A stretch of DNA of 63,888 nt, filler included, from Octopus bimaculoides (GCF_001194135.2; 10 parts of 9 records of this genome joined end to end with filler, not necessarily neighbours in it), one strand, 5' to 3'; positions 12,540-33,070 are shown, counted from the whole stretch's first letter. The notes: generated by a model not told the origin, from the letters alone. Translations and numbers: made by a program.

Positions 12540-14190
12540 TCTACAGTTCGAAAATTTGATCAAAGAAGAGCTCGCTGCTGGTCTGCAGGCACCTGATATT
12601 GAAAAAGAGTCCTGTCCAGTTGGAATTTATTTGTGACTCCCTCTAGCTTACTATATTTTTTACTTAGCCATGTGATCGCACACATTAAATATTATAGGCG
12701 CTGGCATACATCTCTCCTGAGCTTCAGTTTCTACACTGAAGGGAATAGGTTTCAGCCTTCTTGCAACAACACGAGCCATCGTCTCCGTGCAGAATTGGCG
12801 GAGAAGTATCGGGAATCTGAGCGGACATCTAAACCTGATTCCACAGAAATCTAATGTTTGTTGTGTCAAGAGCCTTTCACGGACCACAAAAATACGATGA
12901 ATGAATTCTGATATTGTTCCTTAAACTTCTCCTGAAGTTACCTTGTAACGAAGATCATGTTGACATGTCAACTGTCTGTCAGTTCCTGCGGAAACCGCAT
13001 TGTGATTCTGGTGTGATGTTTTCGGATATCGATCAGATCAGTCTTTTGACCTTAATCCTGATAAGGATCTTCTCAGCTATAAACAAAAGTATTATAACCC
13101 ACTGATGGAACAGACAGATTTTACTCCTTGGGTTTTGCAGTAGATGATGTTAGCATCCCTCCAATACTAAGGTATTTATCAGAATAAATACCTTAATAAT
13201 ATTTTCACGCTTCTGTGAAGCAGCAAAGAAGCGTTCATATACAAAAGGTAACTAATGTTATTTATGAATTCTACCAGAATGTTATTCGGTCCAGAAGATT
13301 ACCTGGTTTTTAAACTTTTGAAATGGAGCATAATTTTCCGCAAAATATTGCAGTACATCAACACAATAAATTATAGACGTTTCAGGAAATCCCTCCATGC
13401 CTTTTGGATTCACTGATTTAGACTGGTTTAAGAGCTAACCGAATTGCTCTCTCTAGCGCTCCTCTATTATTAACTGGTCTTTTAGAAAAAAAATGCTGTC
13501 TGATGATGACTTCACTCATGCCATGAAACTATTCATGTGACGATAGTATTTACCCATCATAAGAATTCTGCATGGCATATCTATCTCCATACGTTTCGAT
13601 TGTTTAGTACTTTACAAGCGACTATTCTCTTTTCAGAGTGCAAAGTGAAGAAGAGCTTGTCACTATTCTGTAGACCTTGTGAATATCATTCAGTAGTCGA
13701 TCGATTGTACTGTAGTTCTCATTGGACCAGTTTCAATATTATCCGGTTTGAAATCAATATTTTGGTAACAGTATCTTAGAGGATAGAACTTCAGCGGAAT
13801 AATTTGTCATTCATGCGAGTATCCAAGGATTTCAGGAACCCTAGTAGCAAGAAAGTAAAAAAAGAAAAATCTTTACAAATACCGTGACTATCATGTTTGC
13901 AGTAATTCAGTCTTTTGATGTTCAACATTCTGGAGAATTGTAAGAAGCGCATGGACAGTGTGACGTTTGTTCGTATCATGCAATAGTCTGTTCAACACCC
14001 AGTTCACCGTATTGCGCGCGTGAGCAAAACATCCTTGCGATTTTCCGGTCTGATCATCAATAAGTAGCCTATGTTTTGATCTAGGAGGCGTTTATAAGCT
14101 TATGGTGTTATCATTCTGCTGGTAATTGATAATGGTAATATTAAGAGTGTTCTTCGATCTCAATATTACCTACAAGACGAAGAGCTATTA
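12540..14190 (-). mobile_element. RTE (BovB-like) LINE, decayed ORF2 (APE end plus RT)
   Basis: Reverse frames give PRSKH, WRDANII, AEKILIR, TPESQCGFRR, LQEKFKEQ and PAPIIFN remnants of RTE motifs; many stops and frameshifts. Confidence 0.85.
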
Positions 14191-16485: not shown

Positions 16486-16725
16486 GGCACATAAAAGACA
16501 CCATTTCGAGCGTGGCCGTTTTCGTGCGGGTGACACGTAAAAGCACCCACTACACTCTCTGAGTGGTTGGCGTTAGGAAGGGCATCCAGCTGTAGAAACT
16601 CTGCCAAATCAGACTGGAGCCTGGTGTTGCCATCCGGTTTCACCAGTCCTCAGTCAAATCGTCCAACCCATGCTAGCATGGAAAGCGGACGTTAAACGAT
16701 GATGATGATGATGATGATGATGATG
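16486..16725 (+). mobile_element. SINE with V-domain-like core and RTE-type tail (family D)
   Basis: GTTGGCGTTAGGAAGGGCATCCAGCTGTAGAAAC core; tail CCAACCCATGCTAGCATGGAAAGCGGACGTTAAAC(GAT)n; second copy at about 37620. Confidence 0.75.
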
Positions 16726-17154
16726 CATATTGATACAATGAAAATTGAAGTGTCCATCAATATATTTCCTGAACACTGATATACAGTAGTTTTCAGACAC
16801 AAATGTATATACACATACACATGATTGGCTTCAGCAAAGTTTCCACTCTCCAAATTGCACTGTGTTAGTCAACATATGTTTTATGAGTGGTATTTGTTCA
16901 GTGGAAACTTACTGAATCCTGTTCTGTGTGTGTTTGTCTAAAAATTGCTGTATCCTAGAACTTCTGGAAAATTTACCGGAGTGATTGTAGTTAAGCCTTA
17001 GGATTGCAATGTAGTTAGGATTGTGATTGTAGTTAAGCACAATATATATAAATGCCTTAAATTTGGGATAAAATTAAGTAACGTATATCACCATAAATGC
17101 TTCAAGGATTGCTTTTCCTTAGTGGTATTACAACAACTTTTATATGTTTTGCAG

Positions 17155-17433
17155 TTTATTTCTGGTGAAGTCTATGATGTAGATGGGAAGATGCTCACAC
17201 GACTCGATGAACTTGAACAGCATCCAGATGTTTACAAACGTGAAAAGATATCAGTTATTTCCAACGGCAATAGTTTTATGTCCTGGTGCTATATCCTTCA
17301 GAAGCCTAAGCCTAAACTTCTTGACCTAGAATTTCTTGATAATTACAACAACAACAACAGTGCTGAAAAGGATAAATATATCAGGCGTACTAAAGATGAT
17401 ACTCCTTTTCTTCCACAAGTGATGGAAAGTTAA
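17155..17433 (+). CDS. GGACT: Gamma-glutamylaminecyclotransferase-like last coding exon, copy 1
   Basis: TTTTGCAG acceptor, phase 0. FISGEVYDVDGKMLTRLDELEQHPDVYKR aligns with the GGACT/AIG2-like GEVYxVDxxML..LDxxE..P..YxR motif, with the catalytic Glu kept. 92 aa plus TAA. The N-terminal YGTLK exon was not found in the sequenced bases. Confidence 0.85.
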   Translation, partial: FISGEVYDVDGKMLTRLDELEQHPDVYKREKISVISNGNSFMSWCYILQKPKPKLLDLEFLDNYNNNNSAEKDKYIRRTKDDTPFLPQVMES

Positions 17434-17770
17434 CTTTCAACTCTAATGTTATGTTAACTCTTATGTATGTATAAGAGTTACCATACATTTGTATAAAATC
17501 ATGTTTTAATTCGATTTTATGAGAATTAAAGATAAATCAAATATATTTTACCACTTTTACTGATGTCTCAACTACTTATAATTTTACTTTTTAATGGCTT
17601 GGTCTAAGGGGAAAATCTAGGGTTTTTGACTTTTTATGGTCAAAAACCCTATAGAGTGATTGTAGTTAAGCCTTTGGATTGCGATGAGATTAACGAATAA
17701 ATATCACCATAAATGCTTCAAGAATTGCTTTTCCTTGGTGGTGTAACAACAACTTTTGTATTCTTTGCAG

Positions 17771-18049
17771 TTTATTTCTGGTGAAGTCTACGAAGTAGAT
17801 AAGAAAATGCTCAAGCAACTTGATGAGTTTGAACTGCATCCAGATGTCTACAAACGTGAAAAGATATCAGTTATTTCCAACAACAATAGTCTTATGTCCT
17901 GGTGCTATATTCTTCAGAGACCTAAGCCTAAACTTCTAAATCTAAAATTTCTCGATAATTACAACAACAATAGCTGTGCTGAAGAGGATAAATATATCGG
18001 GGATACGGAAGAAGATACTTTTTATCCATCTCAAGTAATGGAAAGTTAA
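17771..18049 (+). CDS. GGACT: Gamma-glutamylaminecyclotransferase-like last coding exon, copy 2
   Basis: TCTTTGCAG acceptor, phase 0. FISGEVYEVDKKMLKQLDEFELHPDVYKR..; intact 92 aa plus TAA, same length as copy 1. Confidence 0.8.
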   Translation, partial: FISGEVYEVDKKMLKQLDEFELHPDVYKREKISVISNNNSLMSWCYILQRPKPKLLNLKFLDNYNNNSCAEEDKYIGDTEEDTFYPSQVMES

Positions 18050-18249
18050 CTTGTAACTCTAATGTTACATTAACTCTTACATACGTATAAGAGTTACCAT
18101 ACATTTGTATAAAATCATGTTTTAATTCGATTTTATGAGAATTAACGATAAATCAAAATATATTTTATCACTTTTGTCGATGTCTCAACTACTTATAATT
18201 TTACTTTTTTAATGGGGAAAGACTAGGGTTTTTGACTTTTTATGGAACT

Positions 18250-21362: not shown

Positions 21363-21833
21363 GGATCTTTCCCCTTTGAACGACAGATCGAGAAATCAAT
21401 TTTTGGTAACTAAACACTTTCAAACTTCGGACACTCTTTTCCCTTTGAAAGCCAAATCGAGAAATTAATTTTTTGTAACTAAGCACTTTCAAACTTCGGA
21501 CACTGGTAGAATGTGTCATATAGAACATCTTTTACTCTTGGTGTTGTTGAGAAAAGTTTATATTTTCAGAGTTATTTCGTGTTAAAGTAGTCGTATTTCG
21601 GTAATTTCAACCAATCAATGACGTGTACTCAGCTGAATAAAATTACTGTTGTTGTTTGTCAACAACAACTATCGGCGGTGTATATTTCGTTTGTCACGAA
21701 ATAACCTTGAAAATAGAAACTTTTCTCAACAACACTAAGAGTAAAAGATGTTTTATATGACAGTGTCCGAAGTTTGAAAGTGTTTAGTTACAAAAATTAA
21801 TTTCTCGATCTGCCGTTCAAAGGGTAAAGATCC
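21363..21833. mobile_element. Fold-back MITE with about 140-bp TIRs and duplicated left end
   Basis: GGATCTTTCCCCTTTGAACG..CACGAAAT arm is mirrored by ..CGTTCAAAGGGTAAAGATCC; the first ~70 bp occur twice on the left. Confidence 0.8.
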
Positions 21834-25239: not shown

Positions 25240-26410
25240 TACCTACACAGTTGTGCCCCACCACCACTTTTGTTTTCTCATAGCTTCCAGAAAAATGAAT
25301 ATTTTTTAATGAAATTTTTACAGATACGTTTCAGATGATGTAGATTTGTGGATGAATTCTGCTCCAAGTACCCCATATAACCTCTTATAACTTTTTTATT
25401 TTGGGGGAATTTTCAGAACTTTTTTTTTGCGAATTTGTGTTCTACCCACAGGAATTCATACGATTATGCAAAAACCGAAAAAAAAAAAAAAAAAAAANNN
25501 NNNNNNNNNNNNNNNNNNNNNNNNNNNNNNNNNNNNNNNNNNNNNNNNNNNNNNNNNNNNNNNNNNNNNNNNNNNNNNNNNNNNNNNNNNNNNNNNNNNN
25601 NNNNNNNNNNNNNNNNNNNNNNNNNNNNNNNNNNNNNNNNNNNNNNNNNNNNNNNNNNNNNNNNNNNNNNNNNNNNNNNNNNNNNNNNNNNNNNNNNNNN
25701 NNNNNNNNNNNNNNNNNNNNNNNNNNNNNNNNNNNNNNNNNNNNNNNNNNNNNNNNNNNNNNNNNNNNNNNNNNNNNNNNNNNNNNNNNNNNNNNNNNNN
25801 NNNNNNNNNNNNNNNNNNNNNNNNNNNNNNNNNNNNNNNNNNNNNNNNNNNNNNNNNNNNNNNNNNNNNNNNNNNNNNNNNNNNNNNNNNNNNNNNNNNN
25901 NNNNNNNNNNNNNNNNNNNNNNNNNNNNNNNNNGAGAAGAATTTCGGAAAATTTACACGAGTCGGTTTTATTTCCTCATAACTTTCAGAAAAATGGTTAT
26001 TTTGTTTTTTTAAAATTTGTACAAATACCTATCAGAGTGTGTAGATTATATCGGAATTTAAGACGGAAAAATAATTTCGAAAACAATTGTGATATGTATC
26101 AGTATGTATGTCTGTGTGTCTTCCATTTTCCTCATTAAATCTTGATATAATCATAATCTACAAACTCTGCAAGATATTTATAGAAAATTTCATGTCCCTC
26201 CACCATTTTTCTGAAAGTTATGAGGGAACAGAGCCGACCACGTGTGGATTTTCCGAAACTCCCATCGGAAAAACTTTTTCACAATAAATTCCGATATAAT
26301 CGGAATTTACACCATCTGAGGCTAACTTGTAGAAAATTTCATTAAAAAATATCCATTTTTCTGAAAGTTATGAGGAAAAAAAGTCGGTGTGGGTTACACT
26401 TGTATAGGTA
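25240..26410. mobile_element. Fold-back DNA element with about 120-bp TIRs and internal subrepeats
   Basis: TACCTACACAGTTG..CATAGCTTCCAGAAAAATGAATATTTTTTAATGAAATTTT is mirrored at the right end; the TTCCTCATAACTTTCAGAAAAATGG unit recurs internally in both orientations; the centre is a gap. Confidence 0.7.
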
Positions 26411-32346: not shown

Positions 32347-33070
32347 ACCGGGTACAGTGAAGAAAATGTCGTCTCAATTATGCAGAAATGAAAATAACAC
32401 TGACATCTCATTTTAACATATATTTACCAAAATTACATAAAAATATATTGAAATACTAAAGAGTAAATTTATTCAATAAAATCGCCATTGGCTTGACTCC
32501 GGCCTCAGAATCTCCTGCAACTCTTCTAGACGGTCTCCTTGTTTAAGTCGGTGAATGCTGCCATAATCCTTGCCTTCAGTTCATCTTTGGTGTTACAAGG
32601 AGTTTTGTTGGTCTCCCGCTCAACTGCTCCCCACACATAATAAAAGGGATTGCAGTCTGGGGAGTTTGGTGGCCAGATGTTAGGGGTGATGTCATTACAG
32701 AAATTGTTTGACAGCCATGACTGGATTCTCCTGCTTGTGTGGCATTGTGCAGAGTCCTGTTGCCAGATAGAGGGTGTTCCAGCAACCACTCTCTTGATCC
32801 AGGGCAGCACTATCTCCTGCTGGCACTTGATGTAGGCCTCAGTGTTGAGTCTGAGGCTGTGTTGGAAGATGAATGGAGGCATAACGTCGCCATCACTAGT
32901 GATCACTCCAAACACCATGATGTTGACTGGAGGTTTCATTTACGTACTGCAGAACTTGCTCTGCCTTTACTGGATTTGAGAAATTCAGCATCGATTTTCT
33001 GCCTGCATCATTCATCCTGCCAATACTGCCTTAAAGTGAGTTGAATTATCATGTTAGATCATATTAGGAG
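32347..33070 (-). mobile_element. Tc1/mariner (maT/DD37D-like) transposase C-terminal fragment
   Basis: IMVFGVITSDG..WQQDSAQCHTS..WPPNSPDCNP.YYVWGAVE..KARI. Confidence 0.85.

What the first reader, a model, noticed from the sequence alone, without database searches (positions are those of the whole stretch)
16979..18245. Tandemly duplicated GGACT last exon: candidate alternative terminal exons
Two ~600-660 bp units each carry an acceptor, an intact phase-0 92-codon exon and 3' UTR. Only ~130 bp separates the end of unit 1 from acceptor 2, so copy 2 has no upstream exons of its own. They differ at 22 of 92 residues yet keep the frame, length and catalytic Glu. One gene could therefore make two enzymes with different active-site halves by last-exon choice. 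Vertebrate GGACT is known to me only as a single catalytic form.
Basis: partly seen in the sequence, partly recalled or inferred. Interest (0 to 1): 0.8.

Follow-up and report, generated by a model that had tools for sequence, protein, structure and literature searches.

The report
Octopus GGACT duplicated alternative last exon
An octopus gene for the small enzyme GGACT carries two tandem copies of its last coding exon. They very probably serve as alternative protein endings, but public annotation of this species already lists them as isoforms X1 and X2, so the case is ordinary.

Summary
Window 16979-17653 and 17654-18245 are tandem copies. Each holds a ...ttgcag acceptor, a 92-codon phase-0 exon (17155-17433; 17771-18049), a stop codon and a homologous 3'UTR. 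The exons differ at 22 of 92 residues.

The piece is Octopus bimaculoides chromosome CM046606.1. The gene has a single first coding exon 3.8 kb upstream, outside the piece, ending in phase 0.

RefSeq already lists both endings as 'putative gamma-glutamylcyclotransferase CG2811' isoform X1 (XP_014778863/4, copy 1) and X2 (XP_014778865, copy 2). O. sinensis (X1/X2) and O. vulgaris (CAI9724073/CAI9724072) carry the same pair. The O. vulgaris authors say splice variants were added from transcript assemblies.

The duplication predates the O. bimaculoides/O. vulgaris split, and 12 of the 22 differences are copy-specific in both species. Argonauta hians shows a single last exon within the 10 kb examined.

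Both copies keep every family-invariant residue, including the catalytic Glu (human Glu82; codon 21). Copy-specific residues flank that Glu and lie in the C-terminal cavity loop and tail.

Copy 2 is under purifying selection (dN/dS 0.27). Copy 1 evolves at dN/dS near 1. Mid-exon and 3'UTR show gene conversion.

Lingula anatina has the same architecture independently. I saw no transcript reads directly. Verdict: real, well interpreted, already annotated, modest interest.

The parts
16979..17653 (+). Duplication unit 1: 176 bp of intron, exon copy 1 and about 220 bp of 3' flank
   Evidence: Direct repeats and alignment. The orthologous units in O. vulgaris and O. sinensis are 1.1-1.4 kb.
17654..18245 (+). 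Duplication unit 2: 117 bp of intron, exon copy 2 and about 196 bp of 3' flank
17155..17433 (+). Last coding exon, copy 1 (92 codons plus TAA). This is the C-terminal half of RefSeq isoform X1 (XP_014778863/4) and UniProt A0A0L8GR56.
   Evidence: Translation. 100% match to P0001/P0004. Acceptor ttttgcag|TTT is conserved in O. vulgaris and O. sinensis.
17771..18049 (+). Last coding exon, copy 2 (92 codons plus TAA). This is the C-terminal half of RefSeq isoform X2 (XP_014778865).
   Evidence: Translation. Identical to the C-terminus of P0005. Gene model L004 10001-14929. Acceptor tctttgcag|TTT is conserved in three species.
17215..17217 (+). Codon 21 of copy 1 (GAA), equivalent to catalytic Glu82 of human/mouse GGACT
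   Evidence: Alignment to 2kl2/3jub. Catalytic residue list in PMC2954230. 3jud is the E82Q mutant.
17831..17833 (+). Codon 21 of copy 2 (GAA), equivalent to the same catalytic Glu
17434..17639 (+). 3'UTR-homology block of copy 1, with ATTAAA at 17525-17530
   Evidence: 92% identical to the copy-2 block. Hexamer scan. ATTAAA is conserved in 5 of the 6 units of three species.
18050..18245 (+). 3'UTR-homology block of copy 2. The ATTAAA is changed to ATTAAC (18141-18146); a TATAAA variant lies at 18108.
17618..17651 (+). Perfect 13-bp inverted repeat (TAGGGTTTTTGAC / GTCAAAAACCCTA) exactly at the unit 1/unit 2 junction. It is present only in O. bimaculoides and probably marks the rearrangement that removed the spacer.
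   Evidence: RNA fold -20.4 kcal/mol, z = -3.8. The right arm is absent from the O. vulgaris and O. sinensis units.
17696..17701 (+). AATAAA hexamer in the 117-bp stretch before acceptor 2. It is a possible second poly(A) signal for copy-1 transcripts.
   Evidence: a consensus match only.

Best explanation
The piece lies inside the Octopus bimaculoides GGACT-family gene (RefSeq name 'putative gamma-glutamylcyclotransferase CG2811').

Gene structure. The coding sequence has two exons. Exon 1 lies 3.77 kb upstream of the piece and encodes the YGTLKRG substrate-binding loop. The last exon encodes the other 92 residues, including the catalytic Glu and three active-site tyrosines.

Origin. A segment holding the last exon, part of the intron before it and the 3'UTR was duplicated in tandem. 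This happened before O. bimaculoides and O. vulgaris diverged, and probably after the Argonauta lineage split off.

Mechanism (inferred from gene structure). The single exon-1 donor (phase 0) can be spliced to either acceptor. Each copy has its own stop codon and 3'UTR. The outcome would then depend on competition between splicing to acceptor 1 with polyadenylation after copy 1, and read-through with splicing to acceptor 2. This is a standard alternative-last-exon arrangement.

Products. The two proteins share residues 1-65 and differ in the half that carries the catalytic Glu. Fixed copy-specific residues sit on the helix just before that Glu and on either side of it (L vs F, Q/S vs L). Others lie in the C-terminal loop and tail that line the substrate cavity in mouse GGACT (RRTKDD vs GDTEED, i.e. 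near-neutral vs strongly acidic).

Later changes. Gene conversion has homogenised the middle of the exon and the 3'UTR. In O. bimaculoides the several-kb spacer seen in O. vulgaris and O. sinensis was lost, bringing acceptor 2 to 338 bp after stop codon 1.

Shown here: the anatomy, the single exon 1, conservation, residue retention and the fold. Inferred: the splicing competition and any biochemical difference. Taken from others' annotation: use of both acceptors.
For: - The piece is 100% identical to CM046606.1.
- There is one exon 1 with a phase-0 GTAAGT donor and no second copy within 25 kb.
- RefSeq isoforms X1/X2 in O. bimaculoides and O. sinensis, and two O. vulgaris proteins, share one start and use copy 1 or copy 2.
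- O. vulgaris splice variants came from PASA transcript assemblies.
- Copy 2 orthologues are 90% identical at protein level against 76% between paralogues.
- Four-taxon informative sites favour orthology over concerted evolution by 21:2 in the intron, 7:0 in codons 1-23 and 8:1 in codons 65-93. The counts are 1:2 in codons 24-64 and 1:6 in the 3'UTR.
- dN/dS is 0.33-0.49 between paralogues, 0.27 for copy 2 orthologues and 0.30 for exon 1.
- All 15 invariant or near-invariant family columns in the last exon are kept in both copies of three species. For copy 1 the chance of this is P = 0.022 given its 19 changes.
- Equivalents of Glu82, Tyr88, Tyr115 and Tyr143 are retained.
- Both isoforms score above the Pfam GGACT gathering cut-off.
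- AlphaFold2 gives pLDDT 94.9 and 93.4 with the same topology. The best structural matches are mouse and human GGACT, TM 0.82-0.91.
Against: - No transcript read or cDNA contig was seen. Look-ups of all isoforms returned only genome records.
- Copy 1 evolves at dN/dS = 1.13 between O. bimaculoides and O. vulgaris (Nd 24.7, Sd 5.3). This is compatible with neutrality. The difference from copy 2 is only marginal (Fisher P = 0.077).
- An open frame in copy 1 is weak evidence by itself. About 40% of simulated neutral copies stay open after 30 substitutions.
- In O. bimaculoides the conserved ATTAAA of copy 2 is mutated to ATTAAC, so its poly(A) site is not identified.
- Annotation pipelines can propagate models from protein alignments.
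Confidence: 0.8

Rival explanations
1. Only one copy matters. Copy 1 (or less likely copy 2) is a relic exon that is spliced rarely or never and is drifting. The gene would effectively make one enzyme, and the second isoform in databases would be annotation noise.
For: Copy 1 orthologues have dN/dS = 1.13 and 19 of 92 amino-acid changes, against 9 of 92 and 0.27 for copy 2. An intact ORF is expected by chance about 40% of the time. No transcript was examined here.
Against: - Copy 1 keeps all 15 conserved family positions (P = 0.022) and all active-site equivalents.
- Its acceptor is identical over the last 22 nt in O. bimaculoides and O. vulgaris.
- It carries the conserved ATTAAA.
- RefSeq calls it isoform X1 with two accessions in two species, and it is the UniProt entry.
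- Copy 2 is clearly constrained.
Confidence: 0.15
2. Assembly artefact: two alleles, or a mis-joined repeat, placed in tandem by the assembler.
For: The two units are adjacent and similar in length. The window contains an assembly gap elsewhere (25498-25933).
Against: - Protein divergence of 24% is far above allelic levels.
- Both copies are present in independent assemblies of O. vulgaris and O. sinensis.
- 12 copy-specific residues are shared across species, and 21 copy-specific intron sites.
Confidence: 0.01
3. Two separate genes: copy 2 belongs to a second GGACT gene with its own promoter and first exon.
For: GGACT-family genes do occur as tandem whole-gene paralogues in other animals, e.g. 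Drosophila CG2811/Tina-1 and zebrafish ggact.1-3 (from memory, not tested here).
Against: tblastn finds a single exon 1 in 25 kb of O. bimaculoides, and one each in the O. vulgaris, O. sinensis and Argonauta loci. Only 117 bp of duplicated intron precede acceptor 2. The exon starts at codon 66 with no ATG context.
Confidence: 0.02

Closest known systems
RefSeq/ENA annotation of this very locus: O. bimaculoides XP_014778863/4 (X1) and XP_014778865 (X2); O. sinensis XP_029638373/XP_036360007 (X1) and XP_036360008 (X2); O. vulgaris CAI9724073 and CAI9724072
   Same: Exactly the two endings found here, joined to the same first exon.
   Different: The databases only list the isoforms. I found no paper that describes the duplication, its age, the gene conversion or the residue mapping.
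Alternative exons created by tandem exon duplication (general class; Kondrashov & Koonin 2001 and Letunic et al. 2002, cited from memory), and alternative last exons coupled to polyadenylation (review PMC11802343, listed; I did not read it)
   Same: Homologous exons in tandem have the same length and phase, and one is chosen per transcript. Choice of the last exon implies choice of poly(A) site.
   Different: Classical mutually exclusive exons are internal and need a mechanism that prevents double inclusion. Here each copy ends in a stop codon and a 3'UTR, so exclusivity follows from 3'-end formation.
Lingula anatina (brachiopod) GGACT-like gene, isoforms X2 (P0017) and X3 (P0108)
   Same: One exon 1 ends at the same position (…GKGQ|), followed by two alternative C-terminal exon sets in tandem (L006 11533-11964; 12849-13118 plus 13461-13499). 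One copy has LDLLE and the other LDDFE at the catalytic Glu, the same L/F contrast as in octopus.
   Different: The Lingula copies are only about 40% identical and are each split by a further intron. This is a separate duplication: octopus copies are 76% identical to each other and at most 46% to either Lingula isoform at full length, and Argonauta has one exon.
Human/mouse GGACT (A2LD1; PDB 3JUB, 3JUC, 3JUD, 1VKB, 2KL2)
   Same: Same fold (TM 0.82-0.91), the YGTLKRG loop, and equivalents of catalytic Glu82, Tyr88, Tyr115 and Tyr143.
   Different: 36-38% identity. I know of no alternative C-terminal halves in mammals (from memory). The octopus proteins have a longer C-terminal tail.

Membership tests
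GGACT / AIG2-like gamma-glutamylamine cyclotransferase (Pfam PF06094) | Pfam GGACT domain above the gathering score | tested here: met
   Isoform X1 scores 86.4 bits and X2 85.9 bits against a cut-off of 22.8.
GGACT / AIG2-like gamma-glutamylamine cyclotransferase (Pfam PF06094) | N-terminal YGTL(K/R)xG substrate-binding loop (mouse Tyr7-Leu10) | tested here: met
   VFVYGTLKRGQPNH is in exon 1 (L004 10067-10261), outside the piece and shared by both isoforms.
GGACT / AIG2-like gamma-glutamylamine cyclotransferase (Pfam PF06094) | Catalytic Glu (human/mouse Glu82) and active-site Tyr88, Tyr115, Tyr143 | tested here: met
   Codons 21, 27, 46 and 75 of both exon copies in three species.
GGACT / AIG2-like gamma-glutamylamine cyclotransferase (Pfam PF06094) | Gamma-glutamyl cyclotransferase fold | tested here: met
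   AlphaFold2 pLDDT is 94.9 and 93.4. The isoform X1 model best matches 1vkb, 3jud, 3juc and 3jub in Foldseek, E = 1e-13 to 1e-14.
GGACT / AIG2-like gamma-glutamylamine cyclotransferase (Pfam PF06094) | Activity on gamma-glutamyl-epsilon-lysine rather than gamma-glutamyl-alpha-amino acids | not testable with these tools
   This needs an enzyme assay. The RefSeq name 'CG2811' is by homology only.
Alternative last exons from tandem exon duplication | Two homologous terminal exons in tandem, each with an AG acceptor and a pyrimidine tract | tested here: met
Alternative last exons from tandem exon duplication | A single shared upstream donor in a compatible phase | tested here: met
   One exon 1 with donor AAC|GTAAGT, phase 0. 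Both copies start in phase 0.
Alternative last exons from tandem exon duplication | Each exon has its own stop codon and poly(A) signal | tested here: inconclusive
   Both copies end in TAA. Copy 1 has ATTAAA at 17525, and an AATAAA lies at 17696. Copy 2 has ATTAAC in place of the conserved ATTAAA and only a TATAAA variant.
Alternative last exons from tandem exon duplication | Transcripts that contain each junction | not testable with these tools
   The only support is indirect: RefSeq X1/X2 in two species and PASA-derived variants in O. vulgaris. No cDNA contig was found.

The most novel reading that the evidence does not exclude
Both endings are expressed and kept different by selection despite ongoing gene conversion. 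Octopus would then make two GGACT enzymes that share the gamma-glutamyl-binding loop but differ next to the catalytic Glu (Leu vs Phe) and in the cavity-lining C-terminal loop and tail (near-neutral vs strongly acidic). These would have different amine-side substrate preference or partners. The same solution would have arisen independently in Octopus and in the brachiopod Lingula.
Probability: 0.3. Interest if true: 0.45.

Novelty: already known. Interest (0 to 1): 0.25.

Why it matters
The case shows how a partial gene duplication can give one gene two enzyme variants without a second promoter. It adds an evolutionary picture that the databases lack:
- the duplication predates the split of the Octopus species compared;
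- gene conversion is mosaic, with two islands of fixed copy-specific residues around the active site;
- the two copies are under unequal constraint;
- an independent parallel exists in Lingula.

If the isoforms differ in substrate preference, this would be a new facet of gamma-glutamylamine catabolism. As it stands, the arrangement is a standard kind and is already annotated at this locus.

Tried and rejected
- Transcript evidence. Exact-sequence look-ups of all isoforms (P0001-P0005) returned only genome assemblies or nothing. No run-assembled cDNA contigs appeared.
- Literature. There were no hits for the six XP accessions. No listed paper contained 'gamma-glutamylcyclotransferase CG2811' together with octopus or cephalopod.
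- A second last exon in Argonauta hians. Only one was found from exon 1 to 10 kb downstream of it. 'Isoform X1' there must refer to some other difference.
- Collapsed alleles or assembly artefact. Rejected on cross-species conservation.
- A second first exon for copy 2. Rejected.
- Pseudo-exon reading of copy 1. Not excluded, but weakened by retention of all conserved residues.
- Spacer origin. I asked whether the 5-6 kb spacer in O. vulgaris and O. sinensis is insertion or the compact O. bimaculoides state is deletion. O. bimaculoides unit 2 lacks about 300 bp or more of upstream intron homology that unit 1 and both O. vulgaris units keep. Sequence downstream of O. bimaculoides unit 2 resembles the O. 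vulgaris spacer at paralogue-like identity of 81-85%. This favours a larger ancestral duplication with different deletions in each lineage, but it is not proven.
- The deep profile search of 1.84 billion representatives was not used, because it carries no names or context.

Full report
**1. Observation**

The region 16979-18245 is a tandem duplication. Four collinear repeat families have a period of 606-675 bp, and the pairwise alignment has 88% mean column identity.

Each unit contains a pyrimidine-rich tract ending in ttgcag. After it comes an open 92-codon exon starting TTT ATT TCT GGT GAA (17155-17433 and 17771-18049), then TAA, then about 200 bp of homologous 3' flank.

The exons differ at 42 of 279 nucleotides and 22 of 92 residues. 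Unit 2 begins 117 bp before its acceptor.

**2. Identity of the locus**

The piece is 100% identical to Octopus bimaculoides chromosome CM046606.1 (L004 position = window position minus 3120).

Both peptides hit only Octopus GGACT-family proteins. Cluster look-up gives their names.
- Copy 1 is the C-terminus of RefSeq 'putative gamma-glutamylcyclotransferase CG2811 isoform X1' (XP_014778863.1, XP_014778864.1) and of UniProt A0A0L8GR56.
- Copy 2 is the C-terminus of 'isoform X2' (XP_014778865.1).
- O. sinensis has X1 (XP_029638373, XP_036360007) and X2 (XP_036360008).
- O. vulgaris has CAI9724073 and CAI9724072.

In all three genomes the two gene models start at the same base and end after copy 1 or copy 2.

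The first coding exon lies at L004 10001/10067-10261, 3.77 kb upstream of acceptor 1 and outside the piece. It ends AAC|GTAAGT in phase 0. It is the only such exon in 25 kb.

This reading is already in public annotation. For O. vulgaris the authors state that alternative splice forms were added by PASA from Iso-Seq and RNA-seq assemblies (PMC10700109). RefSeq variants are, to my knowledge, created only with alignment support; I did not verify that here. I could not see a transcript myself, because exact look-ups returned genome records only.

**3. Age and evolution**

In O. vulgaris and O. sinensis the duplicated units are longer (1.1-1.4 kb, 86.7% identical) and lie 6.1-6.8 kb apart. The spacer contains several SINE-like repeats.

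Copy 2 orthologues are 90% identical in protein and copy 1 orthologues 79%. Paralogues are 76% identical.

Twelve of the 22 O. bimaculoides differences are copy-specific in O. vulgaris as well: codons 8, 16, 20, 22, 69, 77, 78, 80, 81, 84, 86 and 87.

Four-taxon informative sites show a mosaic:

| Region | Orthology : concerted |
|---|---|
| upstream intron | 21 : 2 |
| codons 1-23 | 7 : 0 |
| codons 24-64 | 1 : 2 |
| codons 65-93 | 8 : 1 |
| 3'UTR | 1 : 6 |

The duplication therefore predates the species split. Gene conversion has since homogenised the mid-exon and the 3'UTR. One recent tract is visible in O. vulgaris copy 2, which reads RPQP like copy 1, while O. sinensis copy 2 still reads RPKP.

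Argonauta hians has one exon 1 and one last exon from exon 1 to 10 kb downstream of it. That exon is 49-52% identical (45-48 of 92 residues) to the octopus copies. This places the duplication within the lineage leading to Octopus, unless Argonauta lost a copy.

The compact O. bimaculoides arrangement looks derived. Unit 2 lacks upstream intron homology that unit 1 and both O. vulgaris units retain. The junction carries a perfect 13-bp inverted repeat found in no other unit.

**4. Constraint**

| Comparison | dN/dS |
|---|---|
| paralogues | 0.33-0.49 |
| exon 1, O. bimaculoides vs O. vulgaris | 0.30 |
| copy 2, O. bimaculoides vs O. vulgaris | 0.27 |
| copy 1, O. bimaculoides vs O. vulgaris | 1.13 |

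The counts for copy 1 are Nd 24.7 and Sd 5.3. For copy 2 they are 9 and 7, giving Fisher P = 0.077.

So copy 1 is relaxed, or diversifying, or perturbed by conversion. Its open frame is weak evidence, because P is about 0.4 under neutrality. However, none of its 19 changes touches the 15 invariant or near-invariant family columns of this exon (P = 0.022). Its acceptor is unchanged between species.

**5. What differs between the proteins**

Both isoforms exceed the Pfam GGACT cut-off. Both are predicted with high confidence to have the same fold: pLDDT 94.9 for O. bimaculoides X1 and 93.4 for the O. vulgaris copy-2 form. The X1 model's best structural matches are mouse 1VKB and human 3JUB/3JUC/3JUD.

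The mouse catalytic site is Tyr7, Gly8, Thr9, Leu10, Ile50, Glu82, Tyr88, Tyr115 and Tyr143. Cavity residues are 11-13, 79-81, 84, 133-142 and 144 (PMC2954230).

By alignment, Glu82, Tyr88, Tyr115 and Tyr143 correspond to exon codons 21, 27, 46 and 75. All are retained in both copies.

Note that the catalytic Glu is the one in LDE(L/F)E, not the Glu of GEVY.

The copy-specific residues form two islands.
- Codons 8-22 lie on the helix that ends at the catalytic Glu. They include codon 20 (mouse Phe81, a cavity residue), which is Leu in copy 1 and Phe in copy 2. They also include codon 22, next to the Glu.
- Codons 68-87 lie in the C-terminal cavity loop and tail. Copy 1 reads RRTKDD and copy 2 reads GDTEED. 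The tail net charge is 0 to -2 in copy 1 and -7 to -9 in copy 2.

That these changes alter specificity is inference.

**6. Comparison and novelty**

The arrangement is an alternative last exon born by tandem exon duplication, which is a well-known kind.

The same architecture exists independently in the brachiopod Lingula anatina. There, one exon 1 ends at the same position and is followed by two alternative C-terminal exon sets that are about 40% identical, annotated as isoforms X2 and X3.

No paper mentioning these octopus isoforms was found, but the isoforms themselves are in RefSeq and ENA. I therefore rate the finding as real, correctly interpreted, already known at annotation level and of modest interest. 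The open questions are whether both junctions are used at meaningful levels, and whether the two enzymes differ.

Noticed in passing
window 16524-16725: A SINE-like repeat of about 190 bp is followed by a (GAT)n microsatellite in the intron upstream of unit 1. Copies at 80-92% identity occur several times in the O. bimaculoides, O. vulgaris and O. sinensis loci, including three in the O. vulgaris spacer between the exon copies.
   Followed up: partly
window 17618-17651: A perfect 13-bp inverted repeat (predicted hairpin -20.4 kcal/mol, z = -3.8) sits exactly at the junction of the two units. It is specific to O. bimaculoides. It may be a scar of the rearrangement that removed the spacer, and it lies about 90 nt after the copy-1 ATTAAA.
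   Followed up: partly
window 17450-17485 (and the homologous 18066-18101): A 15-nt inverted repeat (93% complementary) lies just after the stop codon. It is conserved in the 3'UTR of all six units of three species. The 3'UTR is more alike between copies (92%) than the coding exon (85%).
   Followed up: no
L004 10001-10066 (O. bimaculoides, upstream of the piece): The RefSeq 179-aa models start at an upstream in-frame ATG that adds a hydrophobic 22-residue N-terminus (MSRFNLIVLISLLSFVLCLPLI) resembling a signal or anchor. O. vulgaris, O. sinensis and Argonauta have no ATG there, so it may be 5'UTR.
   Followed up: partly
L006 10001-13502 (Lingula anatina LFEI02000243.1): A brachiopod GGACT-like gene has one first exon and two alternative, about 40% identical C-terminal exon sets (isoforms X2/X3). 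This is an independent instance of the same architecture, with the same Leu/Phe contrast beside the catalytic Glu.
   Followed up: partly
L001 22218-22496 vs L002 24687-24965: O. vulgaris copy 2 carries a short tract (…AGAGGCCTCAGCC…, RPQP) identical to copy 1. O. sinensis copy 2 keeps the copy-2 state (RPKP). This indicates a recent gene-conversion event across a 6-kb spacer.
   Followed up: partly
window 25498-25933: A run of N (assembly gap, 436 bases) lies inside the piece and is also present in CM046606.1. ORFs listed across it are artefacts.
   Followed up: yes
window 32526-32939 (- strand): A 137-aa ORF has a weak DDE_3 transposase match (27.2 bits, just under the 28.6 cut-off). It is probably a Tc1/mariner-type transposon remnant.
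   Followed up: partly
window 21363-21435 and 21762-21833: A pair of 73-bp inverted repeats (94.5% identical) lies about 330 bp apart. This may be a MITE-like element.
   Followed up: no
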